Positions 9,358 through 50,485 are shown, counted from the stretch's first letter. The stretch: 64,000 nucleotides of DNA from IMGVR_UViG_3300027541_000009:62001-126000; one strand, 5' to 3'. Translations and numbers: made by a program. Notes: a model not told the origin generated them from the letters alone.

Positions 9358-9918
9358 ATGTCTGCGTTTAAAATTGTACAAAATTTACCTACTTTGAGTG
9401 TTGCAGGAACTGGAATAGTGACTTCAACTCCTATTGCACTTAAATCCGGTTATTTGCGTATTGTACCAGAACAAAATACTTATATTGAATTAGGTACAAC
9501 ACCAGTAGTTAACACCTCAACTTCAATATGGATTCCTGCAAATGGTGAATTAATCTTAAAAGAAACTGTAAGATCACAACCAACTGTAGGAATACAAACA
9601 GGAGCAACTACAACAATTACAGTACCATCTGGAACTGGATGTGCATTTGAAGTTGGTGATTATGTATCACTATCTGGAATTTCTCCCGCAGGAATTAATA
9701 CTAATTTTGCACGAGTTTCCAATATTGATCAATCTACATCATATGATAGCCCACATCAAACCAAAATGGTTTTGAGTTGGGATACATCATCACAAGGTCC
9801 TGTTACTGTACCTACAGGTGAAGTTAGAAAAGTAACCAAAGTTGCTGCCTATAATGACAGTGGTTCCTCTTCAAAAATTCATATTACAGAAGTACAAGTC
9901 GTATCTAATTTCAGCTAA
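9358..9918 (+). CDS. Hypothetical beta-rich, probably virion-associated protein
   Basis: 186 aa Thr/Val/Gly-rich ORF whose stop overlaps the gp21 start. Confidence 0.7.
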   Translation: MSAFKIVQNLPTLSVAGTGIVTSTPIALKSGYLRIVPEQNTYIELGTTPVVNTSTSIWIPANGELILKETVRSQPTVGIQTGATTTITVPSGTGCAFEVGDYVSLSGISPAGINTNFARVSNIDQSTSYDSPHQTKMVLSWDTSSQGPVTVPTGEVRKVTKVAAYNDSGSSSKIHITEVQVVSNFS

Positions 9919-10571
9919 TGAAACTAATCACAGAAGAAATTGAACAGGTAGAAGTTATCGTTGAAGAAATCAACGGTAAAAAATCTCTCTACATTGAAGG
10001 AATATTTTTACAAGGAAATATTGCAAATAGAAATAGAAGAATGTATCCAATGGACACCCTGAGAAAAGGGGTTAATTTGTATACTGAAAATTATTTAAGC
10101 AAAGGTAGAGCAGTAGGTGAACTTGGTCACCCATCTGGACCAACTATCAATTTAGATAGAGTTTCTCACAATATTATTTCACTAAAAGAAAGTGGTAATA
10201 ATTTCATAGGCAAAGCTAAAATTTTAACTTCCTTACCAATGGGTAAAATTGCAGCAGGTCTTTATGAAGAAGGTGTAAAACTTGGAGTTTCTTCTCGTGG
10301 TGTTGGTACGTTAGTCCAAACCAATGAGGGTTACAGTAAAGTAAGTGAAGATTTCATGCTTTCTACTGCTGCTGACATTGTGCACGATCCATCTGCACCT
10401 GAAGCTTTTGTAAATGGAATCATGGAAGGTGTTAGTTGGTTATATGATTCTAAAAAACAAATTTGGATTTCTGAAAATATTAAAAATAAGATTGAAAATG
10501 ATGTAGTTTCTAGAAGATTAACTGAAGAAAGAAAATTACAACATTTTGAAAATTATTTAAAACTCATATAA
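9918..10571 (+). CDS. gp21: Prohead core protease gp21
   Basis: NRNRRMYP, GELGHP, VSSRGVG and DIVHDPSAPEAFV motifs. Confidence 0.94.
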   Translation: MKLITEEIEQVEVIVEEINGKKSLYIEGIFLQGNIANRNRRMYPMDTLRKGVNLYTENYLSKGRAVGELGHPSGPTINLDRVSHNIISLKESGNNFIGKAKILTSLPMGKIAAGLYEEGVKLGVSSRGVGTLVQTNEGYSKVSEDFMLSTAADIVHDPSAPEAFVNGIMEGVSWLYDSKKQIWISENIKNKIENDVVSRRLTEERKLQHFENYLKLI

Positions 10572-24468: not shown

Positions 24469-24624
24469 ATGAAAACCTTTCAGGAATTTAAAAAAATTAT
24501 AAATGAAATGGTAGGTGATTTTGGTTCTGGTGTAAGACCACCAAAACCCAAATGTTATGGGAAAACGACTACTTATGCCATGCTTCCCGGAAAAAGAGTA
24601 TGTAAGTTCAAAAGAAAAAGATAA
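24469..24624 (+). CDS. 51 aa basic microprotein with a T4 capsid-targeting-like N-terminus (MKTFQEFKKIINE), absent from the ORF track
   Basis: Translated by hand: MKTFQEFKKIINEMVGDFGSGVRPPKPKCYGKTTTYAMLPGKRVCKFKRKR; has its own late promoter and terminator. Confidence 0.7.
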   Translation: MKTFQEFKKIINEMVGDFGSGVRPPKPKCYGKTTTYAMLPGKRVCKFKRKR

Positions 24625-31494: not shown

Positions 31495-32694
31495 ATGAAG
31501 TCCTTTCGTCAGTTTATATCAGAAGCTTTAGAAACTGTAGCATCATCTCAAGCCAAGCAAATGGGTTTGAGGGGGAATGGTCATGGAGATTGGTACGACA
31601 ATCAAGGAAATTTAGTAGCAAAAACTGTTGGTGGAAAATTAAAAGTATTTAAAGGGAGAGGTGGAAAGGGACCTAGAGATGAATCTCAACCTCAAACTAA
31701 ACAAAAGATATCAGTAACTGATAAAGTTTCTCAACAACAATCTGATGCACAACAGCAACAGTCGGACGGATCCGATGGAATCGTTGTAGTATTTGGAAGA
31801 TTTAATCCACCATCTAGGAATCATGAGCAACTTTTAAAATTTGGATTTGCTAGATCTAAAGAATCTGGATATGACTATAGAATTTACCCAAGTCGTATTC
31901 AAGATGCTGGAACTAATCCATTGAATCCTTCTTTGAAGGTTCAATTTATGCAGATCATGTATCCAGAGTATGCAGATTATATTTTAGATAGTGAAGACTC
32001 TAAGACAATTTTTGATGTACTTGAATCTTTGTATGGAGATGGATATAAGAATGTTAAAATTGTAGTTGGATCAGATAGACTTGGAGAATTTCAAAGTCTT
32101 GCTCATAGGAATGATGGTCAGAATTATACTTTCGATAATATAGAAGTATTATCTGCATCTGTTAGAGATCCTGATAGTGATACTGCAGGTTCTGGATCTT
32201 CTGTAGCATTGAGAACTGCTGCTGCTGAAGGAAATTATGAAGCATTTGCTTCTAATCTTCCACCTAAAATGAAAACTGCAGATAAGCAGCAATTATTTGA
32301 TTCTGTAGTTAAATCGATGAAAATTGGTGAGGATTTAGAATTGTGGAAGATTGCCCCCGAACTTGATATGGAAAGTTTGCGTATAAATTATAAAAAAAAT
32401 AATTTATACCCTGTAGGTTCTATGGTTGAAAATTTAAATACCGGATTATCAGGAAGAGTTTTAAGAAGAGGTACAAATTACCTTATCTGTGTTACAGAAA
32501 GTGGGGTAATGTTTAAATCTTGGTTGCAAAATGTAAGAGAATCTACTTATGAGGTAGGGACAGATAAGTATAGGGAAAAACTTCAAAGCATGGTACATGG
32601 TCAACCTATAAAATCTTTTACTAAAATTCCCATTAAAGAAACTGTACCTAAAAACCTAAATAAACTTAGGAAAGATTTGCAAAAAGTAAAATGA
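31495..32694 (+). CDS. Cytidylyltransferase-like (HUP-fold) nucleotidyltransferase with a capsid-targeting-like N-terminus
   Basis: VVFGRFNPPSRNH, IVVGSDR and SSVALR motifs; N-terminus MKSFRQFISE. Confidence 0.8.
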   Translation: MKSFRQFISEALETVASSQAKQMGLRGNGHGDWYDNQGNLVAKTVGGKLKVFKGRGGKGPRDESQPQTKQKISVTDKVSQQQSDAQQQQSDGSDGIVVVFGRFNPPSRNHEQLLKFGFARSKESGYDYRIYPSRIQDAGTNPLNPSLKVQFMQIMYPEYADYILDSEDSKTIFDVLESLYGDGYKNVKIVVGSDRLGEFQSLAHRNDGQNYTFDNIEVLSASVRDPDSDTAGSGSSVALRTAAAEGNYEAFASNLPPKMKTADKQQLFDSVVKSMKIGEDLELWKIAPELDMESLRINYKKNNLYPVGSMVENLNTGLSGRVLRRGTNYLICVTESGVMFKSWLQNVRESTYEVGTDKYREKLQSMVHGQPIKSFTKIPIKETVPKNLNKLRKDLQKVK

Positions 32695-34381: not shown

Positions 34382-34400
34382 TACTAAATTAAATAAGTTT

Positions 34401-34429
34401 TGGAGACCTTTCTAGGGTCTCCATTTTTT
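34401..34429 (+). terminator. Intrinsic terminator
   Basis: TGGAGACC/GGTCTCCA stem followed by T6. Confidence 0.8.
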
Positions 34430-34436
34430 ATAAATA
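34429..34436 (+). promoter_or_regulatory. T4-type late promoter
   Basis: Exact TATAAATA upstream of the Ig-domain gene. Confidence 0.8.
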
Positions 34437-34466
34437 CTCTTAGAAAAAACTTACGGGAATAAACAA

Positions 34467-35261: not shown

Positions 35262-35270
35262 TAATTTAGT

Positions 35271-35878: not shown

Positions 35879-36299
35879 TACTAGAGTGGCAGTACTTGAA
35901 GAAAAATTCAGTGTGTATGAGCAAATGATGAATAAGTTAGAAGCTGCAATAAGAACAATTAGTGAAACTAGTCAAGGCATTTCAAAAATGTTGGCTATAC
36001 ATGATGAAAGATTGGAAAATACAATAAGATCGGATACATTGATTTTACAAAAAATTACTGAGGTAGATGCTAGAAATGCCATAGAGCATGAAAAAGTAAT
36101 TACAAGAATGAATGAATTGGAAGATAAAGTCGATGAAATAAGTAAAATTAAATGGATGACTATTGGAACTGGAGTAGTTCTTGCAGTATTAGCAACAGCA
36201 TTTTCAACTCTTGCTTCTGGTTGGTGGACTCCTCCTGAAATGCAAATGTTAAAAGATGGACATATGCATCAGCAAAACGTACCTCCAGATAAGAATTGA
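35853..36299 (+). CDS. Coiled-coil protein with a C-terminal transmembrane helix
   Basis: GGAGG RBS before GTG 35853; hydrophobic MTIGTGVVLAVLATAFSTLASGWW. Confidence 0.7.
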   Translation: MFNQNAPFDTRVAVLEEKFSVYEQMMNKLEAAIRTISETSQGISKMLAIHDERLENTIRSDTLILQKITEVDARNAIEHEKVITRMNELEDKVDEISKIKWMTIGTGVVLAVLATAFSTLASGWWTPPEMQMLKDGHMHQQNVPPDKN

Positions 36300-36324
36300 C
36301 AAAAACTTGATCTTTCAGTAGAGT
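36296..36324 (+). promoter_or_regulatory. Possible sigma70-like promoter upstream of primase
   Basis: TTGACA-17 nt-TAGAGT. Confidence 0.4.
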
Positions 36325-36347
36325 GTGAGTCACAGACTTTTATATGA

Positions 36348-39640: not shown

Positions 39641-39650
39641 GGAGAATTAA

Positions 39651-40793: not shown

Positions 40794-40794
40794 T

Positions 40795-40823
40795 AAAAGA
40801 GGGGTAATAACCCCTCTTTTTTT
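40795..40823 (+). terminator. Intrinsic terminator after nrdB
   Basis: AAAAGAGGGGT-AATA-ACCCCTCTTTT followed by Ts. Confidence 0.85.
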
Positions 40824-40862
40824 ATGAAAAAGATAAATAAAAATAAAGATCTTTTTATATTA

Positions 40863-42734
40863 ATGGATAAATCACAAAATATTTACGAAGCTTATCTTCA
40901 GGTTTATTCAGAAGGTATTGCATCAGAACATCCTGATATTTCTGGACAGAAGGAATTTGCCAAAAAGGCAGATGAAGAACTTGCACGTAGAAGAAAGGAA
41001 AGAGCAAAAAAATCGGGACCTCAACTTCCTAAGTTTTTAAAAACTAAGAAGGGTATTCAAATCGAAGAAAAGGATCATGAGTACTCAATGGCTCGAACTG
41101 AACTTCATAAAATTGATGGTGCAGTTAAAAAACTTCGTAAAAAATTAAAAGGTGAAGGTAATATTGAAGCTTGGGTGCAATCTAAAATTACGAGAGCAGC
41201 AGATTATTTAGATTCAGCATCAACTTATATTGAGAGTGGTGAGCACGATCATATTGAAGAAGATATTATGCTTGAAAGAGAAATGACTCCTTCTGAAGTT
41301 AGAAAGGAGAAAAGACTTAAAGGTAAATATGATGATAGTGGAATGAAGAAAAGTATGATTGATCAATATGGGGAAGAAAAAGGAAAGCAAGTATATTTTG
41401 CAACTATCCGTAAGCAAGCAATGGCAAACTCATTTGAACCAGAAGGTGAACAACTTGATGAGAATCCACTGGTCGGATTAGGACTTCGTGCAGGTGCTGC
41501 TGCACTTGGAGGTTATCTAGCAAGCAAGGGCATGGAGGCAGCAAAGAAAAAAGTAGATTCTACAATTGATAAAGCAAGAAAAACTTCACCTATTGGTGGT
41601 GAGAGATATTCTTCACAATTAAATCAATTAAAGCAATCAATTGATTATGATGGTGAAACCTTAGAAGAGAAAAAACTTTCAAGAACTGAAAGAAGAGAAC
41701 AAAATCAAGGTAAAAAGAAAAAAGGTGGTGCAGTTCATGCTTACGATATGGACGAAACTTTGTTTGGTCATGACCATTCAAAAGTAAAAGTTCATGTAAA
41801 AGATGATAAAGGAAAGAGAGTACAGAGTCTCACTAATCAAGAGTTTAATACTCACAAACTTCCAAAAGGACATTCTTATGACTTTGGTGAATTCCGTAGT
41901 TCTAAAGTCTTTACAAAATCAGCTAAACCTAATAAAGGAATTATCAAAAAGTTAAAGAAGCAAGTAAAGCAAGGTAAAAACGTTCATATCATTACTGCTC
42001 GTGGTGATATGGATGATCAAAAAACCTTTTCAAAACACTTGAAAAAACACGGTATTAATATTGAAAAAGGTGGAAAAAATTATGTTCATGTCCATCGTGC
42101 AGGAAATGTAGAAGGTGGTGACATTGGTGAAAAGAAAAAAACCATCCTTCATGGTTTAATGAAGAAAGCAGGTACTAAAAAAGGTCATATGTATGATGAT
42201 GCGGCAAAAGTGCATAAAGCAATGGAAAAGGCCAATAAAGAAACAGTATCTGGTCCAAAAGTTAAAACTCACATGGTAAAACCAAATAAGGAGGGTAAAG
42301 TCGTGTCACGTTCTTATCAAGCAACTAAGGAAGAATTTGAAGTTATTTTAGATTTTATTCTAGAGCAACTTGTAGATCAGGGTTATGTAGAAAATCTAGA
42401 TTCTGCATTGGATTTAGTAGATACATTTGAAGAGGATTATGTAGATGATTTAATTTCACAGAGTATTGGATTACTTTCAGAATCTGTAGAAGATGAATCT
42501 GCTTTAAAATTTGGATACGTATCTAGATTTACAAATAGAACTGAAAATACAATCGAAGAGGATGACGAACAACTAACACCATATGAGTATTGGAAAACAT
42601 TTATTGGTGAAGATGATATTCAAGAAGAAGTTGAAGAAGAGGTTATTTCAGAAGAAGTAATTGTAGAGAATAAAAAAGAAACTACTTATGAACAGTGGAA
42701 AAAATTTATTGAACAAAGAGAAGTTCAAAAATGA
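40863..42734 (+). CDS. Modular protein containing a HAD-family phosphatase domain
   Basis: AYDMDETLF (DxDxT), IITARG and MYDD motifs within basic modules separated by IEE/LDE/LEE; start may be 40824 or 40863. Confidence 0.7.
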   Translation: MDKSQNIYEAYLQVYSEGIASEHPDISGQKEFAKKADEELARRRKERAKKSGPQLPKFLKTKKGIQIEEKDHEYSMARTELHKIDGAVKKLRKKLKGEGNIEAWVQSKITRAADYLDSASTYIESGEHDHIEEDIMLEREMTPSEVRKEKRLKGKYDDSGMKKSMIDQYGEEKGKQVYFATIRKQAMANSFEPEGEQLDENPLVGLGLRAGAAALGGYLASKGMEAAKKKVDSTIDKARKTSPIGGERYSSQLNQLKQSIDYDGETLEEKKLSRTERREQNQGKKKKGGAVHAYDMDETLFGHDHSKVKVHVKDDKGKRVQSLTNQEFNTHKLPKGHSYDFGEFRSSKVFTKSAKPNKGIIKKLKKQVKQGKNVHIITARGDMDDQKTFSKHLKKHGINIEKGGKNYVHVHRAGNVEGGDIGEKKKTILHGLMKKAGTKKGHMYDDAAKVHKAMEKANKETVSGPKVKTHMVKPNKEGKVVSRSYQATKEEFEVILDFILEQLVDQGYVENLDSALDLVDTFEEDYVDDLISQSIGLLSESVEDESALKFGYVSRFTNRTENTIEEDDEQLTPYEYWKTFIGEDDIQEEVEEEVISEEVIVENKKETTYEQWKKFIEQREVQK

Positions 42735-42991
42735 TCGATAATGCAGTAAGTGAACTTGAAAAAAACCTTCCTAAACTTAGGAAGGTTTCATACTCATCTA
42801 TTGATTCACTAATGAGACGTATTATGAGAAAGTATGATGTTACTGCAAAGGAACTTCATTTCTCTTTTAAAGATAAACATCATAAAACTCCAGATGAGTG
42901 GATCAAAGAAAAAAATTCTTTAAAAGAAATGAAGACTTTTGATGAGTTTTATGAAACTTGTATGTTATTAATGTTTAAAAATGAAATTTAA
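42731..42991 (+). CDS. Small hypothetical protein
   Basis: YSSIDSLMR...ELHFSFKDKHHKTPDEW module; C-terminal MKTFDEFYE. Confidence 0.65.
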   Translation: MIDNAVSELEKNLPKLRKVSYSSIDSLMRRIMRKYDVTAKELHFSFKDKHHKTPDEWIKEKNSLKEMKTFDEFYETCMLLMFKNEI

Positions 42992-43454
42992 TTTTTCTTT
43001 CGGTAAGAAAAGAAGAGGAATTATAGAGTGGGCAAAACTCTCTATAATTTTTGAAAGTATTATTGAGTTTTTGTCAAATAAATTTAATATTGATAAAAAA
43101 AGACTCTGGGATATTGTAGATGAACTTCAAAGAGAACTTTTAAAAAGAGGTTGGATTGATGATACTGTGAATGAGTATGTCATCAATACTCCAGAATTAT
43201 TGGATCAACGAGTTGAACGTGATGTAGATAGAGCAATCGAAGAATATAAACAACTGGAAGAATCAGAACCAGTGAATATGAAGAATGAGGTGATATTAAA
43301 AGAAATAGAAAAAGATAAGTATACTAAAACTCAAAAGAAGATTGTAAAGGATGCAGTATATTATGAAAAACAACCAGATGGCAGTAAGGCACAGGAACTT
43401 TTAGGTGGAGATATTGGTATAAGAGGAATTTGGGAAATTGATAAAGATAAATAA
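42981..43454 (+). CDS. Hypothetical protein, paralogue of 50071..50475
   Basis: Shares the FNFxFGKK start, LWDxxDE, VERDVDxAI and AQxLLGG. Confidence 0.7.
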   Translation: MKFNFSFGKKRRGIIEWAKLSIIFESIIEFLSNKFNIDKKRLWDIVDELQRELLKRGWIDDTVNEYVINTPELLDQRVERDVDRAIEEYKQLEESEPVNMKNEVILKEIEKDKYTKTQKKIVKDAVYYEKQPDGSKAQELLGGDIGIRGIWEIDKDK

Positions 43455-43489
43455 TATTAATAAAAGTACTTTTCAATGCTCAAAGAAAG

Positions 43490-45931
43490 ATGAAAAAAGA
43501 GAATTTGGATGATTTGAAGGTTTTATACGAGAGTGTCTATGATGAAGAATATTTAAATGAAGCACCAGGTGGTCCCGCAAGGTTTTGGGATAGCAATATG
43601 GGCAGGTTTGTCACAAAAGTTACAAATGCTGCTAAATCTGCAGGAGAGTATCTTGCCCCATCCCCAGAAAGGTCTGCTGAACCATCAGTTCGTGCTGGTG
43701 TTAGAACACCAACTACTGGATTTTCTCATGTCCAAAGTATGGATAAAGCACCAACATCAGCAGCAAGAGAAACTAGAGCACAAAGAGAAGCAAGAATATC
43801 AAGAGCACAAGATGCTGCAATTGCTGCTGCAGAAAGGGCAGAAAAAGCAAAAGCAAAAGAAAGAGCAGCAACAACTCCTGCTACAACTCCAGCAAGACCA
43901 ACAGTAACTACACCTGCGGCAACTTCTCCAGCAGCAAAACCAGCAACACCAGGAGCAGGAGCAAAGGTTGCACCAACTGCTGCAGCAAGACCAACAAGTT
44001 CACCTGCAACTGCAACGACTGCACAAAAGATTAAAGGTGGATTGGATGTTTATAAGTCTCAAGTTAAGTCTGGAGATATAAAAGGTGCAGAAGCAACTGG
44101 AAAATCAACTTGGGCATTGGCAAACCCAACACTTGCAAACAAACAAAAAACTCCCAATCCACTATTGCAAGATAATGAAATTAGTAAAATGAAATCTGCT
44201 TCAGTAATGAGGCAGAATAATATATCATTACCAGGTGCAAAAAATCCTACAAGTTCCGATATTTCAATGTCACAACAAAAAGCAAAAGCACAAGAAATTG
44301 TAAAGAGTGGTAAAGTAGAAGCATTGAAACAATCATTTGAATGGGGATCAACTTCTAAAATTGTTGATGATATTGCAGATGCTTATGCTTCAATCTATGA
44401 AGCAAAGAAAAAAGTAGACCAAGACAAAGATGGTGATAATGACTTTGCAGACGTAAGAATTGCAAGAATGATTGCCTCTGGTGTTCCAAAAGAAAAAGCA
44501 ATCGCAGCAGTTAAGAATAAACCATACAATGAAGAATTTGAATCTTGGATTGATTCTCTTGTGGAGGAAGGTTATGACCTTTCTGATTATACTATGGAAG
44601 AAATGTTTGATATTTATCTTAGTGAAGCAGAAGGTTCATATGGAGAAACTCCAAAGGCATATAGTGCAGCATTCAAAACCAAGATGACTGCAAAGAGAAA
44701 ACCTTTCCTCAAGAAAATGATGAGCAGAACTAATCCTGCAAATAGAAAGGATGCTTATGATTCTCCAAGAAAGGGCATGACTGCTTCTGATAGAGAGGAA
44801 GCAAGAGCTGGTGCAGCACATGGTTCCCCTAGAGGACATGATTATCCTTCACAAGGTCCTGGTGGAATAACCAAGAGTGCTAAGAAACTCCGTAAGCAAA
44901 AGGCAATGGGTGAGTTTGGTGAAGCATATGAAATTGATGAAGCAACTAGAATGAGAAAGGAACTCGGTAAGGAAGGTGAAATTGCAACTCGTAAGGAACT
45001 TGCAGCACGTTCTAAATCATTCAAACGTTCTGGTAGTGTAGATAAGACAATTGCAGCAGCAGAAAGAGGTGCCGATAGACCTTATATTAAGCACAAACGT
45101 GATGAATCTGATTCTGACAGAAAAGCAAGAGAAGAAAAGCAAAGTAGAACACTAAGAGGACTTGCTGCTTCGAGAAGAGGGTCTGTAAGGGATAAACCAA
45201 GAGCAGGAATGAGAGGATATGCTGCTAAGGTAGAGGGTTCTGATAGGGACCTACAATCTGCAAGAGGTTCTGCCAGAAGTGCAGGAACTCTTACCCCTGC
45301 GGAAAAGCAAAAGTTAAATGATAATTTTAATAAATATCAAAAGGGATCACAAGAACTATCCGAGAAATCAATTATGTCAAACAATCATCAAATTTACGAA
45401 GTAGTGGCAAGCTACCTGCTAGAGAATAATCTAGCAGAATCTGTTGATAGTGCAAATGCTATCATGGAAAATATGAGTTCCCAGTGGATTTCTGGCATTA
45501 TTCAAGAGTACAATGAATATGTAGAAAACTATAATATGTTTGTAGAATGTCTCGATGAATTAGGTTATGATCTATCAGAAATGTCAGATTACGATTTGGA
45601 AGAAGCATATGGTGATCTTTCAACTAGAAAACTGATTTTCACTGAAGCAAGAGCAAAGGGTGTAAAGGCATATAAGCCTGCTCCAACTCAAGCAGAAATT
45701 AGAGCAAATGAAAGAAAAGCTCGTAAAAAGCATGTAGAATCTGGTAGTGATAAGTCAGGTTATGGTCCTGATGAAAAATTCTATAAGCCAGAAGATAAGA
45801 AGGTTCCCGATAAGGAAACTGCAGAATGGTTCAGAAGAGTAGGACACAAGAAAAAGTTCGGCAGACCTTTTGGTAAATATCAACCAAGTGCAATCAAATT
45901 TGGTGATATCAAGAGAATGGGTCTCAAGTGA
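43490..45931 (+). CDS. Very large modular hypothetical protein (polyprotein-like)
   Basis: 813 aa with a Pro/Ala/Thr-rich linker, DKDGDNDFAD motif, repeated acidic GYDLS modules and basic modules. Confidence 0.75.
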   Translation: MKKENLDDLKVLYESVYDEEYLNEAPGGPARFWDSNMGRFVTKVTNAAKSAGEYLAPSPERSAEPSVRAGVRTPTTGFSHVQSMDKAPTSAARETRAQREARISRAQDAAIAAAERAEKAKAKERAATTPATTPARPTVTTPAATSPAAKPATPGAGAKVAPTAAARPTSSPATATTAQKIKGGLDVYKSQVKSGDIKGAEATGKSTWALANPTLANKQKTPNPLLQDNEISKMKSASVMRQNNISLPGAKNPTSSDISMSQQKAKAQEIVKSGKVEALKQSFEWGSTSKIVDDIADAYASIYEAKKKVDQDKDGDNDFADVRIARMIASGVPKEKAIAAVKNKPYNEEFESWIDSLVEEGYDLSDYTMEEMFDIYLSEAEGSYGETPKAYSAAFKTKMTAKRKPFLKKMMSRTNPANRKDAYDSPRKGMTASDREEARAGAAHGSPRGHDYPSQGPGGITKSAKKLRKQKAMGEFGEAYEIDEATRMRKELGKEGEIATRKELAARSKSFKRSGSVDKTIAAAERGADRPYIKHKRDESDSDRKAREEKQSRTLRGLAASRRGSVRDKPRAGMRGYAAKVEGSDRDLQSARGSARSAGTLTPAEKQKLNDNFNKYQKGSQELSEKSIMSNNHQIYEVVASYLLENNLAESVDSANAIMENMSSQWISGIIQEYNEYVENYNMFVECLDELGYDLSEMSDYDLEEAYGDLSTRKLIFTEARAKGVKAYKPAPTQAEIRANERKARKKHVESGSDKSGYGPDEKFYKPEDKKVPDKETAEWFRRVGHKKKFGRPFGKYQPSAIKFGDIKRMGLK

Positions 45932-45950
45932 TCGATTGATTTAACTTTTT

Positions 45951-45978
45951 AAAACCTCTCCGAAAGGGGAGGTTTTTT
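45951..45978 (+). terminator. Intrinsic terminator
   Basis: AAAACCTCTCC-GAAA-GGGGAGGTTTT followed by Ts. Confidence 0.85.
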
Positions 45979-46021
45979 ATTGCAAAATAATAAATAAATT
46001 TGACCCCACACTAAAATAAAA

Positions 46022-46402
46022 ATGAATTATCAAGAGTTTAAAGATTTATCGGAAGCATATCAACAAATTTATGCTTCAATTGAAGAAGAATTAGACATTT
46101 ATAATACTGTAATCGAATTCCTTTGTCTAGAGGGTTATGCCTCTACTTTAGATGAAGCAAATTGGATGGTAGCAAATGAATTAACTGAAAAAGACATACA
46201 TGATATTTTAGAAGCTACTAAATGGATTCAAAAAGCTATTAAAAAACCAGGAGCATTGAGTAAATCTTTAGGAGTTCCTGAGGAAAAGAATATCCCTGCC
46301 AAAAAACTTGCTGCTGCAGCAAAAAAAGGTGGCAAGTTGGGTAAGAGAGCAAGACTAGCTCAAACATTAAGAAAATTAGCAAGAAGAAAAAAGAAAGGAT
46401 AA
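46022..46402 (+). CDS. Acidic leader fused to a highly basic module
   Basis: C-terminal KWIQKAIKKPGAL...IPAKKL...GKRARLAQTLRK. Confidence 0.75.
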   Translation: MNYQEFKDLSEAYQQIYASIEEELDIYNTVIEFLCLEGYASTLDEANWMVANELTEKDIHDILEATKWIQKAIKKPGALSKSLGVPEEKNIPAKKLAAAAKKGGKLGKRARLAQTLRKLARRKKKG

Positions 46403-46406
46403 TTTC

Positions 46407-46434
46407 TTGACAAGTATTCAAATCTTGCTATAAT
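46407..46434 (+). promoter_or_regulatory. Consensus sigma70 promoter facing the minus-strand nuclease
   Basis: TTGACA-16 nt-TATAAT. Confidence 0.65.
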
Positions 46435-46461
46435 AACCCTGTGGAGTTTGAAGAATTACTA

Positions 46462-46514
46462 TATTAAAGAGTAATAAAACTATTAAGATATAAAACTCTT
46501 ATTACTCTTTAATA
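46462..46514. repeat. Perfect 16 bp inverted repeat across the 3' end of the GIY-YIG gene
   Basis: TATTAAAGAGTAATAA (46462-77) and TTATTACTCTTTAATA (46499-514). Confidence 0.9.
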
Positions 46515-46914
46515 CTACTTCATAAATTGTAGTCTTTTCACTTGAGAAGAATTTTCCTTCAATATTGGTGTTGTAATATTCATCACTCATTAAAACATTT
46601 CTATTAAATTGTTCATACATTTCATAGTATGACATGGATTTTTTATGAGGACATAAGTACAAGATTTCTCTAGTAAAATTTTCTTTTCCTATTTCTTTTA
46701 CGTCTTTAGTTAATTCATCACAAGATCCGAAATAATTTTTCCAATTACTTTCTTTAGTTTTCCTTCTTCCTGTTTTTGGATCCTTTCTTCTAACCCAAAA
46801 ATGTTTTTTTCCAATATATTTTTTGTTGTTAGTTGTATTAGTAATCAAATATACAAAACCTTCTAGATTTTTTGTGACTTCAATAAAATCTTCATCATTA
46901 TATTTCCAATTCAT
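46483..46914 (-). CDS. GIY-YIG (Seg-like) nuclease, catalytic domain only; the sole convincing minus-strand gene
   Basis: FVYLITN...KKYIGKK, YFGS, REIL and YYN motifs; TATAAATT late-like box upstream on the minus strand. Confidence 0.85.
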   Translation of the reverse strand: MNWKYNDEDFIEVTKNLEGFVYLITNTTNNKKYIGKKHFWVRRKDPKTGRRKTKESNWKNYFGSCDELTKDVKEIGKENFTREILYLCPHKKSMSYYEMYEQFNRNVLMSDEYYNTNIEGKFFSSEKTTIYEVVLKSNKSFIS

Positions 46915-47053
46915 TAAGATATCTTATTTTGTTTAATTTATATAGTAAGATAATTTAGTTTATTATATTCTTGTCATTTGATCAGTAATCAGGTAGAATA
47001 CAAGACTACAAGTAATATTGTAGTCAACAGAAGTTTGAATATAAAAAGATATT

Positions 47054-47242
47054 ATGGCAAAAAATGAAAAGATTAAAGAAATCTTCGGAGAAACGAAAAA
47101 ATATTTTATTAGTAGAATTAATGAGTTATGTGAGGAAAACCGAACTCTAGATGCATGTGCAATGCATGATGAACTCCGAGAGTGGTTGATAGAGCAGGAA
47201 AAACCGACCATTCTTACCGTAAGACGCAAGAGTAGGATCTGA
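47054..47242 (+). CDS. Small hypothetical protein
   Basis: 62 aa ORF followed by a TTGACA promoter-like site. Confidence 0.55.
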   Translation: MAKNEKIKEIFGETKKYFISRINELCEENRTLDACAMHDELREWLIEQEKPTILTVRRKSRI

Positions 47243-47280
47243 TATTGACAAATCAATAAATAATAACTCATAATATTTTT

Positions 47281-47390
47281 TCATCTTTCCTTCGGGATCA
47301 GATGATTTTTGACTTAGAGCCGTGGGGATTCCCCCTTGAAAAAGGGGATGTGCGGTTTCCCTATACGGATGTAGAATTCTGTACGTATTA
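47281..47390 (+). ncRNA. Candidate structured 5' leader RNA
   Basis: TCATCT/AGATGA stem with a TCC-TTCG-GGA tetraloop; CCGT/ACGG and TCCCC/GGGGA stems; GC-rich island in AT-rich DNA. Confidence 0.45.
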
Positions 47391-48059
47391 ATGCAAAGTT
47401 TCTTTACAGTAGCCCTGCCTCTTCTGGCAACGGTTACAACCAGTACGGCATCACTGCCATTCGTCAACTACAAGATGCAGGGGCCTCCCCCTCCAATTGA
47501 ACCAACAACCAAACCATTTGCTATTATCAAAGAATTTGATCTTGTAGATGAAAAGAAGACAGCAATCCGAGAGGTTGCTCCCGAAAAACCAAAAGAGAAA
47601 AGGCTAATTTGTAAAGGGTGTAATAATCATGAAAATACTGCTTTAGCATATTTTCAAAATATTGGTATCAAAGATAAAAACGCCCTTGCTACTATCATGG
47701 GCAATATTAAGCAGGAATCTATGTTTGTGCCTAATATTTGCGAAGGTGGTAGCAGAACCTCATACTATAATTGTGGAAGAGGTTATGGTTTGATACAATT
47801 TACTTCTGCTTCTCGTTATTATGGACTGGGTGCTTTTGCTAAAAAAATAGGAGGTAATCCTTCTACTGCTGATACTCAACTTCGGTATATTACTACTGAA
47901 CCACAATGGAAGAGTATTGAAAACAGAATGAAAGTTTCTGGAAAATCTATTGATAGGTATATGAATTATGCCTACGAATGGATTGGATGGGGACACCATG
48001 GAGCAAGAACACAATATGCTTATGACTATGCTAAACGATTGGTTCTTGCTGATGTCTAA
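47391..48059 (+). CDS. Lysozyme-like cell-wall hydrolase (phage tail lysozyme family) with an N-terminal hydrophobic segment
   Basis: ATIMGNIKQES and GYGLIQFT motifs. Confidence 0.75.
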   Translation: MQSFFTVALPLLATVTTSTASLPFVNYKMQGPPPPIEPTTKPFAIIKEFDLVDEKKTAIREVAPEKPKEKRLICKGCNNHENTALAYFQNIGIKDKNALATIMGNIKQESMFVPNICEGGSRTSYYNCGRGYGLIQFTSASRYYGLGAFAKKIGGNPSTADTQLRYITTEPQWKSIENRMKVSGKSIDRYMNYAYEWIGWGHHGARTQYAYDYAKRLVLADV

Positions 48060-48099
48060 ATAACTTTACCTGACTTGCTGACACTTTTCAGGTGGGATT

Positions 48100-48120
48100 G
48101 GAGTGCTTCGGCACTCCTTT
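48100..48120 (+). terminator. Intrinsic terminator hairpin
   Basis: GGAGTGC-TTCG-GCACTCC-TTT. Confidence 0.75.
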
Positions 48121-48124
48121 CTTG

Positions 48125-48132
48125 TATAAATA
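48125..48132 (+). promoter_or_regulatory. T4-type late promoter inside a long-range RBS-occluding stem
   Basis: TATAAATA between arms 48070-83 and 48137-50. Confidence 0.8.
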
Positions 48133-48156
48133 GTAATGTCAGCAAGTTAGAGTAGT

Positions 48157-48816
48157 ATGAAACACTTTTATGTGTATTATTCCTATGAGGAATATGGAAG
48201 AGGTTATATTGGAAAAAGAGAATGTAAATGTCTTCCAGAAGAAGATGTAAGTTATTTTGGAAGTTTCAAAGATAAAACTTTCAATCCAACTCAAAAAATA
48301 ATATTAGAAACTTTTGGGAGTGTTGAAGAAGCACTTGAAGCAGAATGTGCTCTCCACGATTTTTATGAAGTAGATAAAAATCCACACTTTGCTAATAGGG
48401 CAAAACAAACTTCTACTGGATTTTATTGTAATAAAGGTGCTGGTGAAGAAGCAAACAAGAAAAGAAGTGAGTTGATGAAAACAGAATACAATCCTATGAG
48501 TAATCCAAAACTCAAAGAGAAAGCAAGAAAAAACTTGATTAGAACTTTGAGTAATCCAGAAATGAGAAAACTAAAAAGTAGAGTTGGAAAGAAAGCACAC
48601 AATCGTCCAGAAGTAGTTGAGAACCATAGACAGGCAGCACTCAAATCTCATCAAAATCCAGAAACAAAAAGAAAACATATTGAGGCAAAACTTGGTGAGA
48701 AAAATCCTTGTTATGGTAAAAAGTGGATTACAAATGGAAATGAAAACAAATACATAAACTCTATTGATGAAGTTCCAAGTGGTTTTTGGTATGGTAGAGT
48801 TTTCATAAATACCTAA
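48157..48816 (+). mobile_element. Free-standing GIY-YIG homing endonuclease (Seg-like) with NUMOD-type C-terminal repeats
   Basis: FYVYYSY...GYIGKR, YFGS, ANRAKQT and GEKNPCYGKKWITNG. Confidence 0.85.
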
Positions 48817-48831
48817 AAAGTACTTATAAAG

Positions 48832-50034
48832 ATGCAGTTTCAAGAAGAAATCCTTGATGAAAGGACTTTGATGGTAGGGAAAAAAGTTAGACCTTCCGGA
48901 ACTATGAATATGCGTGGATCAGAAGGTGCCGCGAGAAAAGATGTTTCTCGTGCGGGGTTTAGGAAAAAAGGTCCCATTCAAGATCCAAAAGTAGAAAAGA
49001 GTGGAAAAGATGTTCCTGTTTGGGTAAGAACTCATAAGTCTCCTGGAGATTATGCTGCTCATACTGCAAGAAAGCAACATAGAGAGGGTGATAAGCCACA
49101 GAGTAAAGAATTAAAAAAACAGTTTGGTAAAACTGGTGCTAAGAAAGATTCTCCAGTTCATGATATCACTGTTGGTTCTCCAAAATCTAAAGTAAAAGAT
49201 CCCGGACAAAGAGCAAGACAATTTGTTGGTGCTCTCAAAGGCGTAAAAGATACTATGAAGTCAAAGAAAGGAGTTGCTACAAATACTCCTACTGCTATTG
49301 ATTCTGCTAAGTCTAAGGGTAAAAAGAGTAGAAGTGGTGAGGAAGGTGCAGAACAAAGAGGTAGAATTTATAAGAAACTAGGAATGGGAGAAAGAAATCC
49401 CAAGACTGGTGTTCAGATGGCGAAGTTGAGTGATTCCTTTAATGGAAAAACTTTTAGTGAGTTTATATATGAGTGTTATATTATTTTAGAAGCAAGAAAA
49501 TATACTAGAATCCGTTCTAGAGAAGATGCTGAGAAAATTCGACAATCACAAGAAAATCCAAATGCTTATAGATTAAAAAATAGACAAACTGCAGAAACTC
49601 CATATTGGGGACTAGAATCCAAAGAAAAAAGAAAAGACCAAGATGAAAGGAGAAAAGAAAATCTAAAAGCGATTAGTCATAAAGAGTTGGAAGATCATTG
49701 TAAAAGAAATTTGCATCCGGGTGATTGTAAAAAAAATGCGAATAGAGCATTAAGAATTGAAAGGGGAAGGAAAAAGTCTCAAAGAGATGAGGCAAAAAGT
49801 AAGTCTCAGGAAACAGGGCAAAAGCATGATGTAGATCATATTCAAGCACAACCAAATAGAAGAAGTGAAACAACAAAATCAAGATTTCAAGCAATTCATC
49901 CGGGTGATTCTTCTGATAATAGGAGAGTAATTCCAAGTAGAGAAAATCGTGAAAAAAATTCTAGTAATACTGAAAAATCAACGACTAGATCTGGTGCTCT
50001 TATGAGAGCCCTTCAAAGAGCTAGACAAAAATAA
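48832..50034 (+). CDS. Basic modular protein with a C-terminal HNH-like nuclease module
   Basis: Internal KTFSEFIYE; HDVDHI...DNRRVI...ENREK HNH-like pattern. Confidence 0.65.
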   Translation: MQFQEEILDERTLMVGKKVRPSGTMNMRGSEGAARKDVSRAGFRKKGPIQDPKVEKSGKDVPVWVRTHKSPGDYAAHTARKQHREGDKPQSKELKKQFGKTGAKKDSPVHDITVGSPKSKVKDPGQRARQFVGALKGVKDTMKSKKGVATNTPTAIDSAKSKGKKSRSGEEGAEQRGRIYKKLGMGERNPKTGVQMAKLSDSFNGKTFSEFIYECYIILEARKYTRIRSREDAEKIRQSQENPNAYRLKNRQTAETPYWGLESKEKRKDQDERRKENLKAISHKELEDHCKRNLHPGDCKKNANRALRIERGRKKSQRDEAKSKSQETGQKHDVDHIQAQPNRRSETTKSRFQAIHPGDSSDNRRVIPSRENREKNSSNTEKSTTRSGALMRALQRARQK

Positions 50035-50070: not shown

Positions 50071-50475
50071 ATGTTCAATTTTAACTTCGGAAAGAAGAAA
50101 CCTGATAAGAAGCAGATAATCCTTATAAGCGTCATACTCAGTGGTATCGTAGCAACCCTCTCCCAATGCACAGGAGCGCCTCAGGAGCGCCTCTGGGACC
50201 TTCTAGACGAGGTTCAGAGATCTCTGTTCCCAGGCACCGTAATCAACGATGTGCTGCTTCAGGACCCTGCTGTGGTTGGTAGGAGAGTTGAGCGTGATGT
50301 GGATAAAGCAATTCGTGATTATGAGGACTTGACAAGAGACTCAGATCCACCTAGAGTACCTTTGCCCAGGTTGATTGAGAAAGCTCCAGATAACTCTGAG
50401 GCTCAACGATTACTTGGTGGGGAGATGAGACTATGCGCTCCATGGGTTGACAGTTGCCCCAAAGAACCTATATAA
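50071..50475 (+). CDS. Hypothetical membrane-anchored protein, paralogue of 42981..43454
   Basis: Hydrophobic IILISVILSGIVATLSQC segment; VERDVDKAI. Confidence 0.7.
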   Translation: MFNFNFGKKKPDKKQIILISVILSGIVATLSQCTGAPQERLWDLLDEVQRSLFPGTVINDVLLQDPAVVGRRVERDVDKAIRDYEDLTRDSDPPRVPLPRLIEKAPDNSEAQRLLGGEMRLCAPWVDSCPKEPI

Positions 50476-50485
50476 TAGAAAAGTC

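What the first reader, a model, noticed from the sequence alone, without database searches (positions are those of the whole stretch)
40863..50034. Candidate system: shared targeting modules loading diverse cargo domains into the capsid
Seen: three recurring signatures across otherwise unrelated ORFs. (1) T4-like leaders: MKTFDEFYE (42929), KTFSEFIYE (49447), MKSFRQFISE (31495), MKTFQEF (24469). (2) An (L/I)xEAYxx(V/I)Y-type leader: NIYEAYLQVYSE (40863 ORF); LKVLYESVYDE and IADAYASIYE (43490 ORF); LSEAYQQIYASIEE (46022 ORF). (3) An acidic helical module: ILEQLVDQGYVENLDSAL, YLLENNLAESVDSANAIM, FLCLEGYASTLDEANWMV, plus two GYDLS(D/E) repeats. Each is followed by a Glu junction and a basic or enzymatic payload (HAD, HNH, nucleotidyltransferase, cationic peptides). 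Inference: a mix-and-match, gp21-processed injection system much richer than T4's three IPs plus Alt, with the Glu junctions doubling as points for payload exchange.
Basis: partly seen in the sequence, partly recalled or inferred. Interest (0 to 1): 0.75.

Follow-up and report, generated by a model that had tools for sequence, protein, structure and literature searches.

The report
Cyanophage capsid-targeting leaders with swappable cargo
A variable stretch of a large T4-like cyanophage genome encodes modular proteins that carry, at their start or at module joints, a tag nearly identical to the one phage T4 uses to load proteins into its head, and related phages have swapped different cargo in exactly behind that tag.

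Summary
The window is part of a 284-kb T4-like cyanophage. The motifs are real and non-random, but they are two different things.

(1) The T4-like leader is a close copy of T4's capsid-targeting sequence (CTS, MKTYQEFIAE|A). It is N-terminal on the cytidylyltransferase (31495) and on a 51-aa cationic peptide (24469), both outside the given coordinates. Inside them it is internal (49447) or near a C-terminus (42929). In relatives, the 49447 motif is the true N-terminus of stand-alone genes with the same cargo. In eight other contigs the conserved 205-aa front module is followed, right after the motif's Glu, by unrelated cargo. That is cassette exchange at the tag.

(2) The EAYxxVY, GYDLS and acidic-helix motifs are not free-standing leaders. 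They define one large uncharacterised family (over 4,400 clusters, no Pfam model) with five to six paralogues in this genome, often next to CTS genes.

Head targeting and gp21 cleavage are inferred, not shown. Supports: gp21/gp22/gp23 are present, published virion proteomes contain the cytidylyltransferase and T4-GC119, and late-promoter-like motifs sit upstream. For the second family, virion location is untested.

Verdict: new variant of a known kind.

The parts
40824..42734 (+). 636-aa mosaic protein. The likely true start is Met14 at 40863, because a NATAAATA motif lies at 40832. Order of parts: N-terminal EAYxxVY (S2) motif at 40878-40913; a module shared with T4-GC119 proteins at 41064-41249; a HAD-like domain at about 41715-42233 (DMDETL motif); a weak acidic-helix (S3-like) module at 42351-42410; an acidic tail.
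42731..42991 (+). 86-aa ORF. It consists of the N-terminal module of T4-GC119-type mosaic proteins (residues 3-68), then a CTS-like motif MKTFDEFYETC at 42929-42961, then a stop after 9 more residues. In effect it is a module plus tag with no cargo.
42981..43454 (+). phrog_3316 paralogue (157 aa). It marks the right-hand flank of the first cassette site.
43490..45931 (+). 813-aa protein made of two fused units of the S2/GYDLS/S3 family. Parts: S2-like motif at 43514-43546; internal S2 at 44366-44410, which is N-terminal in L018/L021; GYDLS module at 44528-44620; S3 at 45395-45487; second GYDLS at about 45527-45625; basic tail. NATAAATA lies 44 nt upstream and a terminator-like hairpin lies at 45955-45972.
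46022..46402 (+). 126-aa minimal family member. It starts MNYQEFKDLSE|AY (S2, 46037-46087), followed by an S3 module (46100-46189) and a basic DUF3008-like tail (46214-46399).
46483..46914 (-). SegE-type GIY-YIG homing endonuclease. It is a mobile element inside the variable locus, not part of the system.
   Evidence: PF19835, E = 8e-38
47391..48059 (+). Phage_lysozyme2-domain protein with a signal-like N-terminus. The homologue in phage DSL-LC02 is annotated as a virion structural protein.
48157..48816 (+). Second GIY-YIG/NUMOD3-type homing endonuclease.
48832..49446 (+). Conserved basic N-terminal module (residues 1-205) of the 400-aa ORF. It is 82-100% identical in 9 IMG/VR contigs and 68% identical to DSL-LC02 WJZ48347.
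49447..49494 (+). Internal CTS-type junction KTFSEFIYECYIILE|A. The Glu codon is at 49489-49491. This is the left breakpoint of the cargo cassette.
49495..50034 (+). Swappable cargo, about 180 aa and basic, with an HNH-like motif (DVDHI..DNRRVIPSxEN). It is 67% and 53% identical to stand-alone genes in L110 and L111 that begin with the tag: L110 with a full 10-residue CTS (MKTFKEFIIE|A), L111 with a shorter 9-residue variant (MKTFQQFLE|A).
50071..50475 (+). phrog_3316 protein (134 aa, with a TM/lipobox-like N-terminus). It is the conserved right flank of the cargo cassette.
31495..32694 (+). Outside the given coordinates. Cytidylyltransferase with the canonical N-terminal CTS MKSFRQFISE|A. This is T4-GC190, which has been detected in virions of related phages.
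24469..24624 (+). Outside the given coordinates. 51-aa cationic peptide starting MKTFQEFKKIINE, with TATAAATA 18 nt upstream.
9918..10571 (+). gp21 prohead protease (Peptidase_S77), the presumed processing enzyme. The gp22 scaffold is at 10630-11856. gp23 is at 11911-13320 and has an FLTE|A site.

Best explanation
Region 40.8-50.5 kb lies between nrdB and the tRNA cluster. It is a hyperplastic locus of a T4-like cyanophage, comparable to the internal-protein loci of the T-even phages, and it holds two kinds of modular genes that are probably expressed late.

(a) CTS-type genes. A 10-16-residue motif, K-T/S-F-x-E/Q-F-(I/L)-x-E|A, is homologous in sequence to the T4 capsid-targeting sequence. 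Here it is N-terminal (31495 and 24469) or internal as a joint between a conserved front module and an exchangeable cargo (48832-50034), and there is a cargo-less stub (42731-42991).

Inferred mechanism: as in T4, the motif docks the protein onto the gp22 scaffolding core while the prohead assembles. The gp21 protease then cuts after the Glu (ISE|A, ILE|A). The freed cargo (nucleotidyltransferase, HNH-like protein, basic DNA-binding pieces) stays in the head and enters the host with the DNA.

Shown rather than inferred: because the motif's coding sequence is conserved, recombination between phages swaps cargo exactly behind it.

(b) A large paralogous family: 636-aa (weakly), 813-aa (two fused units) and 126-aa ORFs, plus two more genes elsewhere in the genome. 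Its architecture is M-x7-L-x-E-A-Y-x-x-V-Y, then GYDLS, a low-complexity stretch, an acidic three-helix module and a basic tail. These genes sit beside CTS genes more often than chance predicts. I take them to be further prohead-core or internal proteins, but with much lower confidence.
For: Shown here:
- Near-identity of the motif to T4 IPI-III leaders.
- N-terminal enrichment: 27 observed against 0.15 expected.
- Conservation of K2, T/S3, F4, F7 and E10 (all at least 90%) and A11 (66 of 89) in 89 of 111 members of one cargo family.
- Synonymous codon variation at these positions, including both Ser codon families, so selection acts on the peptide and not on the DNA.
- Seven unrelated cargo clusters carry the same leader, plus GNAT and PARP-like cargoes in L117 and L059.
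- Sharp breakpoints: residues 1-205 are 82-100% identical, while the sequence downstream of the motif is 22-34% identical. DNA homology stops at 49424-49503 and resumes at 50030.
- The same cargo occurs as stand-alone genes that start with the tag: a full 10-residue CTS in L110 and a shorter 9-residue variant in L111.
- gp21 (PF03420, E = 1.6e-34), gp22, and a gp23 with FLTE|A are present.
- NATAAATA lies 10-60 nt upstream of 6 of 10 candidate genes, against 37 of 390 others (p = 1.7e-4).
- S2/S3-family genes lie within 1.5 kb of CTS genes in 13 of 45 cases, against a 5% background.

From the literature:
- The CTS concept, and the role of residues 4 and 7 in targeting and 8 and 10 in cleavage (PMC9026906).
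- The cytidylyltransferase was found in virions of S-SM1 (25 peptide counts), S-SZBM1 and S-CREM2. T4-GC119 was found in S-SM1 (13 counts).
Against: - There are no direct data on virion content or N-termini for this phage.
- The only motif instances inside the finding's coordinates are internal or near a C-terminus. T4 work has established only N-terminal targeting.
- The GYDLS-bearing S-SZBM1_194 is absent from the 30 proteins of the S-SZBM1 virion list. S-SCSM2R ORF205, which carries the acidic-helix module, is not among the virion proteins that paper names; one of its 23 is an unnamed protein of unknown function.
- Virion evidence for T4-GC119 is at cluster level. The S-SM1 protein was not shown to share the modules present in this window.
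- NATAAATA is not enriched overall in this AT-rich DNA.
- Related loci are not independent samples, so the association p-values are optimistic.
- The gp21-peptide complex prediction gave no answer.
Confidence: 0.55

Rival explanations
1. The S2/GYDLS/S3 family, and perhaps the mosaic proteins too, are not virion proteins. They would be intracellular, largely disordered host-takeover or regulatory proteins. The small acidic three-helix modules would bind a host or phage partner, and the N-terminal EAYxxVY helix would be part of that fold rather than a cleavable leader.
For: - No member of this family appears in the virion proteomes read here.
- In the AF2 model the S2 helix runs straight into the first S3 helix (H3-37), so it may be structural.
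- The genes sit among many small unknown genes typical of non-structural flexible regions.
- One paralogue lies between psbA and psbD.
- Enzymatic cargo is almost absent in 60 family members.
Against: - The motif keeps a fixed register from Met1 (L9-x-E11-A12 in 71 of 150), and the Glu-Ala pair is nearly invariant. Both fit a gp21-type L-x-E|A site that would release an 11-residue propeptide.
- Late-promoter-like motifs lie upstream.
- The genes are linked to CTS genes.
- In L104 an S2 leader replaces the N-terminus of the 48832-type protein.
- The basic tails resemble those of core and internal proteins.
Confidence: 0.3
2. The CTS-like motif is kept only as a DNA-level recombination or translation-initiation cassette, a mobile joint, and has no targeting role in cyanophages.
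For: - Breakpoints of cargo exchange coincide with the motif.
- The motif is tolerated internally and at C-termini.
Against: - Synonymous variation is found at every conserved residue, and Ser is encoded by both TCN and AGY codons.
- The upstream DNA is not conserved.
- The same residues matter for T4 targeting and cleavage.
- Virion detection of the leader-bearing cytidylyltransferase in three phages would remain unexplained.
Confidence: 0.1
3. The 400-aa ORF is an assembly or frameshift artefact that joins two genes.
For: - The stand-alone cargo genes in L110 and L111, and the DSL-LC02 homologue that stops right after the motif, show that the two halves can exist apart.
Against: - The in-frame fusion, with Met replaced by Gly, Lys, Arg or Tyr before KTF, recurs in at least 9 different contigs with different cargoes.
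- There is no stop codon or frame change in the DNA.
Confidence: 0.03

Closest known systems
T4 capsid-targeting sequence with internal proteins IPI, IPII, IPIII and Alt (Mullaney and Black 1996; reviewed in PMC9026906)
   Same: - A 10-residue N-terminal leader, MK(T/S)(F/Y)x(E/Q)F(I/L)xE followed by Ala.
- A gp21-type protease and a gp22 core in the same genome.
- Basic and enzymatic cargo.
- In T4 too, the genes sit in variable regions next to a tRNA cluster and GIY-YIG homing endonucleases (ipI, tRNAs and segB).
   Different: - Different host and phage family (Kyanoviridae).
- Many more cargo types, including a cytidylyltransferase that is core to cyanophages.
- The motif is also used internally as a joint in larger proteins and occurs near C-termini.
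- Some copies carry a YE(x)C(x)3 extension.
- Targeting and cleavage are not demonstrated here.
Polymorphic IP locus of the T-even phages (Repoila et al. 1994, as cited in PMC9026906)
   Same: Different basic proteins that share a CTS-like start replace one another at the same locus in related phages.
   Different: Here the exchange also happens in-frame behind a conserved 205-aa front module. The breakpoints are mapped to the Glu-Ala that ends the motif on the left and to a conserved phrog_3316 gene on the right.
Inner-body and ejection proteins of phiKZ, 201phi2-1 and SPN3US, processed at (A/S/G)-x-E by a gp21-like protease (PMC5694885)
   Same: Paralogous families of head-internal proteins, with cleavage after Glu at several sites per protein, including polyprotein-like processing.
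   Different: - The proteins are not homologous.
- The leader and cleavage motif differ.
- Those are jumbo phages of Pseudomonas and Salmonella.
T4-GC119 and T4-GC190 'structural proteins' of cyanomyoviruses (Sullivan et al. 2010)
   Same: - The 31495 ORF belongs to T4-GC190.
- The 86-aa and 636-aa ORFs share modules with proteins at the GC119 position, between gp16 and gp17.
- Both clusters were detected in S-SM1 virions.
   Different: In the text and supplementary table I read, that paper gives no leader, no processing and no route into the virion. The window's ORFs share only modules with GC119 and lie at another locus.

Membership tests
T4-type CTS / internal-protein system | An N-terminal leader of about 10 residues resembling MKTYQEFIAE | tested here: met
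   Met for 31495 (MKSFRQFISE) and 24469 (MKTFQEFKKIINE), and for genome 225641. Inside 40863-50034 the motif is internal (49447) or near a C-terminus (42929), so for those ORFs the feature is not met as 'N-terminal'. For the 49447 cargo, however, homologues in 89 of 111 clusters carry it N-terminally.
T4-type CTS / internal-protein system | A gp21-type cleavage site: L/I at P3, Glu at P1 and a small residue at P1' | tested here: met
   ISE|A at 31495; ILE|A at residues 218-221 of the 400-aa ORF; E10 in 87 of 89 and A11 in 66 of 89 family members. This is a sequence-level test only.
T4-type CTS / internal-protein system | A gp21 prohead protease and a gp22 scaffolding core encoded by the same phage | tested here: met
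   PF03420 at window 9918-10571 (E = 1.6e-34). The catalytic GELxHP and GVSSRG motifs align with T4 gp21. gp22 and gp23 lie next to it.
T4-type CTS / internal-protein system | The protein is present inside the mature head | not testable with these tools
   Literature only. Cytidylyltransferase orthologues were found in S-SM1, S-SZBM1 and S-CREM2 virions, and T4-GC119 in S-SM1. Nothing is known for the ORFs of 40863-50034.
T4-type CTS / internal-protein system | The leader is removed by the protease and is needed for packaging | not testable with these tools
   The complex prediction of gp21 with the junction peptide gave no answer. No N-terminal proteomics are available.
HNH nuclease (cargo at 49495-50034) | A beta-beta-alpha-metal fold with a catalytic His and Asn/His ligands | tested here: inconclusive
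   Invariant H116, N143, N152 and K155 sit in a DVDHI...DN..V....N..K pattern. There is no Pfam hit and no PDB sequence hit. The AF2 model (pLDDT 85) has a best Foldseek E-value of 1.8 and a best VIA Z-score of 3.5; HNH domains appear only among the weak matches.
HAD phosphatase (636-aa ORF, residues 298-470) | A DxDxT nucleophile motif plus the motif II-IV pattern and HAD-family profile matches | tested here: inconclusive
   YDMDETL is present. PHROG matches are to phosphoheptose isomerase (7.7e-5) and to polynucleotide kinase (7.2e-4). There is no Pfam hit at E <= 0.01 and no PDB hit.
Cytidylyltransferase-like nucleotidyltransferase (31495) | A profile match across the catalytic domain | tested here: met
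   phrog_395, E = 1.5e-74 over residues 88-378. Pfam and PDB sequence searches were negative.
GIY-YIG homing endonucleases (46483-46914 on the minus strand; 48157-48816) | A GIY-YIG domain profile match | tested here: met
   PF19835, E = 8e-38, for the first. phrog_314 (homing endonuclease, E = 5e-12) plus a weak NUMOD3 match for the second.

The most novel reading that the evidence does not exclude
The EAYxxVY-type N-terminus (consensus M-N/D-S-Q/K-E/D-L/I/F-R-x-L-x-E|A-Y-x-x-V-Y, in a fixed register from Met1) may be a second class of capsid-targeting propeptide, about 11 residues long and derived from or parallel to the T4 CTS. The 126-aa ORF starts MNYQEFKDLSE|A, while T4 has MKTYQEFIAE|A. 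If so, the S2/S3 family of more than 4,400 sequence clusters, which has no Pfam model, would be the main internal head proteins of aquatic T4-like phages. Together with the CTS-tagged enzymes (cytidylyltransferase, PARP-like, GNAT, HNH-like), these phages would then inject a large, rapidly shuffled effector repertoire, partly made as polyproteins that gp21 cuts at internal tags.
Probability: 0.25. Interest if true: 0.8.

Novelty: new variant of a known kind. Interest (0 to 1): 0.62.

Why it matters
Virion proteomes of cyanomyoviruses have listed a cytidylyltransferase and hypervariable 'structural proteins' since 2010. In the papers read here, none explains how an enzyme gets into the particle. 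A T4-type targeting tag would explain it and gives a simple sequence rule for predicting which cyanophage proteins are packaged and delivered into Synechococcus or Prochlorococcus at infection. Such proteins are candidates for early host takeover or anti-defence. The mapped cargo swaps behind the tag show how this repertoire diversifies. The S2/S3 family is very abundant in metagenomes and has no annotation at all. The full-text library searched here holds no paper that links capsid-targeting sequences to cyanophage proteins.

Tried and rejected
- Pfam, PDB-sequence and ESM-Atlas searches of the region's large ORFs gave nothing usable.
- BLASTP of the 126-aa ORF against T4 gp68, which has a similar layout of acidic head and basic tail, found no alignment. 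Any resemblance is in style only.
- Fold searches with the good AF2 model of the HNH-like cargo found no significant match. The HNH call therefore stays at motif level.
- The AF2 model of the S2-S3 N-terminus is three helices at pLDDT 73. This is too generic to search with or to decide whether S2 is a leader.
- The complex prediction of gp21 with the junction peptide returned 'no answer' and is not used as evidence.
- I considered that the Met of an ancestral start codon at 49444 had been lost through a small indel. The frames do not fit, and the fused form recurs in many contigs, so I dropped this idea.
- Apart from the 48832 family, the internal matches to the strict CTS pattern look like chance: 31 were observed against about 11 expected, and most of the excess comes from that one family.
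- L008, L092-L095, L103 and L112 are copies of the window's own genome and were not counted as independent.

Full report
CONTEXT

The window is bases 62001-126000 of a single 284,050-bp virus record. It carries the T4-type genes gp20, gp21, gp22 and gp23 (window 7453-13320), DNA polymerase, UvsX, gp41, MazG, and nrdA/nrdB. Its nearest DNA relatives are Synechococcus myoviruses of the Kyanoviridae: S-SRM01, S-CREM1, DSL-LC02 and S-PM2.

The finding covers the stretch between nrdB (which ends at 40793) and a cluster of 12 tRNA genes (from 50486). The ORFs there are:
- 636 aa (40824-42734)
- 86 aa (42731-42991)
- 157 aa (42981-43454)
- 813 aa (43490-45931)
- 126 aa (46022-46402)
- a SegE GIY-YIG endonuclease on the minus strand (46483-46914)
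- a Phage_lysozyme2 protein (47391-48059)
- a second GIY-YIG/NUMOD3 endonuclease (48157-48816)
- 400 aa (48832-50034)
- 134 aa (50071-50475)

Pfam recognises only the endonucleases and the lysozyme-like domain. PHROGs adds weak HAD-type matches for the 636-aa ORF and places the 157-aa and 134-aa ORFs in one family, phrog_3316.

The T4-like pattern K[ST][FY]x[EQ]F occurs seven times in all six frames of the genome. Three occurrences directly follow a start Met: window 24469, window 31495 and genome 225641.

T4's own leaders, read from the T4 record, are MKTYQEFIAE (IPII and IPIII) and MKTFKEFTST...ITE (IPI). MKSFRQFISE|A at 31495 and MKTFQEF... at 24469 are therefore very close copies.

I compiled 4,611 ORFs from this genome and about 100 related loci. 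In that set the strict 10-mer is N-terminal 27 times, against 0.15 in residue shuffles.

The two instances inside the finding's coordinates are not leaders in this genome. MKTFDEFYE lies 20 residues before the stop of the 86-aa ORF. KTFSEFIYE is residues 206-214 of the 400-aa ORF.

Signatures 2 (L-x-E-A-Y-x-x-V/I-Y, here called S2) and 3 (the acidic helical module, S3, together with the GYDLS module) are also real. HMMs built from regex seeds find them with domain E-values down to 1e-18 in the local set.

THE CTS-TYPE MOTIF IS A JOINT WHERE CARGO IS SWAPPED

A scan of IMG/VR with the 400-aa ORF returned 20 loci. After setting aside copies of the window's own genome, the pattern is clear.

In nine contigs with the fused architecture, the first 205 residues are 82-100% identical to the window's protein (L096, L097, L100, L102, L104, L106, L108 and L109 were measured). 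L096 also keeps the window's cargo (98% identical). In the others that were measured, the sequence after the motif is 22-34% identical in forced global alignments, which amounts to unrelated.

At the DNA level, L102 is 97.4% identical from window 48800 to 49495 and then shows no similarity until 50030. From there the phrog_3316 gene is conserved again. The other contigs break at 49424, 49442, 49466 and 49503. The Glu codon of ...IILE|A is at 49489-49491. The cargo cassette is therefore 49495-50029, bounded on the left by the motif and on the right by the next gene.

Two contigs (L110 and L111) carry the window's cargo (67% and 53% identical) as stand-alone genes of 181 and 192 aa, starting MKTFKEFIIE|ARSKEDAEK... 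and MKTFQQFLE|AK... respectively.

A search of 5.8 billion proteins with the L110 protein found 111 clusters. Of these, 89 begin MK[TS][FY]x[EQ][FL][IL]xE, with E10 in 87 of 89 and A11 in 66 of 89. Eight more begin with near variants, and nine have the motif internally behind other N-terminal modules.

The DSL-LC02 homologue of the front module stops immediately after the motif (...ITFNEFMSMIYE*). This resembles the window's 86-aa ORF, which is a module, then the motif, then a 9-residue stub.

In the fused forms the Met is replaced by Gly, Lys, Arg or Tyr, so the cargo cannot be started separately at that position.

THE SAME LEADER SITS ON MANY CARGOES, AND ONE OF THEM IS A KNOWN VIRION PROTEIN

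Every cytidylyltransferase orthologue upstream of nrdA in the nrdB-anchored loci begins with the leader. Examples are MKTFARFFNE, MKRFLEFITE, MKSFLQFLSE and MKKFSQFILE.

Other cargoes are:
- low-complexity proteins of 420-460 aa (MKSFSQFLQE...)
- small peptides related to the 24469 ORF
- a 154-aa PARP-like protein with T4's exact leader (L059: MKTFQEFIAE|AKRIKFYTLHHGTS...GPGVYTS)
- a second PARP-like protein and a GNAT acetyltransferase in L117 (the GNAT has Pfam Acetyltransf hits)
- the HNH-like family

The local set holds seven unrelated cargo clusters.

Codons vary synonymously at every conserved position: AAA/AAG, TTT/TTC and GAA/GAG, and Ser is encoded by both TCN and AGY. The upstream DNA is not conserved. 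Selection is therefore on the peptide.

Published virion proteomes contain the cytidylyltransferase:
- S-SM1: T4-GC190, 25 peptide counts (PMC3037559 Suppl. Table 8)
- S-SZBM1: SSZBM1_140 (PMC9146016 Table 1)
- S-CREM2: ORF154 (PMC10665884)

The same S-SM1 table lists T4-GC119 as a virion protein with 13 counts. This is the hypervariable protein between gp16 and gp17, 276-2985 nt long in different phages.

The window's 86-aa ORF is the N-terminal module of proteins at that gp16-gp17 position (L113 and L115; also S-CRM01, S-SSM7 and S-SCSM2R). Residues 81-142 of the 636-aa ORF are 68% identical to a module of S-SM2's GC119 protein.

This is module-level kinship with a cluster that is virion-associated in one phage. 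It does not prove that the window's ORFs are in the virion.

SIGNATURES 2 AND 3 DEFINE ONE LARGE, UNANNOTATED FAMILY

In relatives, the post-nrdB locus holds zero to four genes with the same order of parts: S2 at about residues 5-25, GYDLS at about 31-61, low-complexity sequence, S3 near the C-terminus, and a basic tail. CTS-type genes are often interleaved. Examples are S-SRM01 QPX48234 / QPX48235 (MKSFSQFLEE) / QPX48236, and loci L023, L025 and L081.

Some relatives have none of these genes there and go straight from nrdB to the segE-like gene and the phrog_3316 gene. The locus is therefore hypervariable.

The 813-aa ORF is two such units fused. Its internal 'DIADAYASIYEAKKKVDQDKDGDNDFAD' is the N-terminus of a 468-aa protein in L018 and L021.

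The genome has two further members:
- Genome 152601-153335, between psbA and psbD.
- Genome 224271-224915, which is followed directly by two CTS-type ORFs, MLTFREFYEICE|A and MKTFQEFMSICEE.

A 45-position S3 profile finds 4,423 proteins at E <= 1e-3 (3,110 at E <= 1e-10) among 1.84 billion cluster representatives. Among the top 150:
- 114 have two or more S3 copies.
- 102 have the S2 motif within the first 12 residues.
- 71 have it in exactly the same register: L9-x-E11-A12-Y13-x-x-V16-Y17.
- None has a T4-type CTS.

Sixty of these proteins were scanned against Pfam and have essentially no domain. 'Mix-and-match leaders on unrelated ORFs' is therefore the wrong description for S2 and S3.

There is some shuffling. 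In L104 an S2 leader replaces the N-terminus of the 48832-type protein. The 636-aa ORF combines an S2 start with a GC119 module and a HAD-like domain.

S-family genes lie within 1.5 kb of a non-cytidylyltransferase CTS gene in 13 of 45 cases, against 5.3% for all ORFs (p = 4e-7). This p-value is optimistic because the loci are related.

HOW IT PROBABLY WORKS

Shown:
- The motif's identity with the T4 CTS.
- Its positional and peptide-level conservation.
- Cargo diversity.
- The exchange breakpoints.
- The presence of gp21 with conserved catalytic motifs, of gp22, and of a gp23 with the same FLTE|A pentapeptide that precedes the mature T4 gp23. That T4 cuts there is established knowledge and was not tested here.

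Suggestive:
- NATAAATA, the T4-type late-promoter core, lies 10-60 nt upstream of 6 of 10 candidate genes, against 37 of 390 other ORFs (p = 1.7e-4).
- It is present before 40863, 43490, 46022, 48832, 24469 and 31495, as it is before gp22 and other structural genes. It is absent before the replication genes.
- The motif is not enriched overall in this AT-rich DNA.

Inferred:
- The leader docks the protein to the scaffolding core.
- gp21 cuts after Glu (ISE|A at 31495; ILE|A at residues 218-221 of the 400-aa ORF).
- The cargo is delivered with the DNA.
- For the fused proteins this would amount to a small polyprotein. That is known for phiKZ-type inner-body proteins (PMC5694885) but not for T4 internal proteins.

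For the S2 family, the nearly invariant L-x-E-A pair at a fixed distance from Met1 would fit an 11-residue propeptide. The 126-aa ORF even starts MNYQEFKDLSE|A, which resembles T4's MKTYQEFIAE|A. However, the AF2 model shows S2 as the start of a long helix that continues into S3 (pLDDT 73). No proteome I could read lists a family member: S-SZBM1_194 is absent from that phage's 30 virion proteins, and S-SCSM2R ORF205 is not among the virion proteins that paper names. I give this reading about one chance in four.

PAYLOAD CALLS

- Nucleotidyltransferase: confirmed (phrog_395, E = 1.5e-74).
- HAD: a DMDETL motif and two weak PHROG matches only.
- HNH: an invariant H...N...N..K pattern similar to the Cas9 HNH motif. 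There is no Pfam or PDB sequence hit. A confident model (pLDDT 85) has no significant structural match; HNH domains appear only among the weak hits. Inconclusive.
- Cationic peptides: the 51-aa ORF at 24469 has a pI of 10.3, and the 400-aa ORF has a pI of 10.2.

COMPARISON AND NOVELTY

This works like the T4 CTS, internal-protein and Alt system and like the polymorphic IP locus of the T-even phages. T4 even places ipI next to its tRNA cluster and the GIY-YIG gene segB.

Sequence-level membership criteria are met for the N-terminal instances. The biochemical criteria (head location, cleavage, leader dependence) cannot be tested here.

The new elements are:
- the occurrence of the system in cyanophages;
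- the breadth of cargo;
- the internal use of the tag as an in-frame exchange joint;
- the link to a very large unannotated family.

Two full-text searches found no paper that connects capsid-targeting sequences with cyanophage proteins. The library is incomplete, so this is not proof of novelty.

My classification is a new variant of a known kind, with interest about 0.6.

Noticed in passing
L059:9132-9596 and L117:3566-3985 (related IMG/VR and JGI contigs): Small proteins of 139-154 aa carry T4's exact or near-exact leader (MKTFQEFIAE|A and MKTFSEFLEE|A), followed by H-G-[ST] and GPG[VH]Y motifs typical of PARP-like (H-Y-E class) ADP-ribosyltransferases. This is a possible functional analogue of T4 Alt. 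There was no Pfam hit for L059.
   Followed up: partly
L117:7582-7968: A 128-aa GNAT acetyltransferase (precomputed Pfam Acetyltransf_1/7/10 hits) starts MKTFSQFIAE|A and lies between two S2/S3-family genes.
   Followed up: partly
window 32691-34163: A 490-aa, very basic (pI 10.1) mosaic protein lies directly after the cytidylyltransferase. Its C-terminal module (...GKSHVVKACEGG..KGKMSAAYWANKVKW) recurs in a GC119-type protein (L116), where it is preceded by an internal GKTFMEFMES motif. An internal segment of it recurs as the N-terminal extension of some HNH-like family members (P0098, P0101, P0107).
   Followed up: partly
window 42981-43454 and 50071-50475: Two paralogues of phrog_3316 each close a cassette site. 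The 134-aa copy has a TM/lipobox-like start (..ATLSQC) and conserved C-terminal Cys residues, and lies near a lysozyme-like gene, so a spanin-like lysis role is possible. The 157-aa copy has lost the hydrophobic segment.
   Followed up: no
window 46407-46434 and 50447-50476: Two perfect 12-of-12 sigma-70 consensus promoters (TTGACA, 16-18 nt spacer, TATAAT). The second lies 10 nt before the first tRNA of the cluster.
   Followed up: no
genome 152148-153335 (outside the window): Between psbA and psbD lie a 145-aa ORF with an HNH-endonuclease-like sequence (not profile-tested) and a 244-aa S2/S3-family gene (MDAQELRNLQEAYMEVVENQ...).
   Followed up: no
window 23973-24624: The 51-aa CTS-bearing peptide lies immediately after the hsp20 gene. 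Sullivan et al. 2010 speculated that hsp20 acts in capsid scaffolding.
   Followed up: no
window 1876-2373: A 165-aa ORF starts MKSYSELSKIFE and carries the 'KHNV..EREHT..QHLEELPDYY' module found in GC119-type proteins. GATAAATA lies 20 nt upstream.
   Followed up: no
window 29651-47819 = L008; also L092-L095, L103 and L112: Several IMG/VR contigs from different metagenomes are 100% identical to parts of the window. The phage, or a very close strain, was therefore sampled repeatedly.
   Followed up: partly
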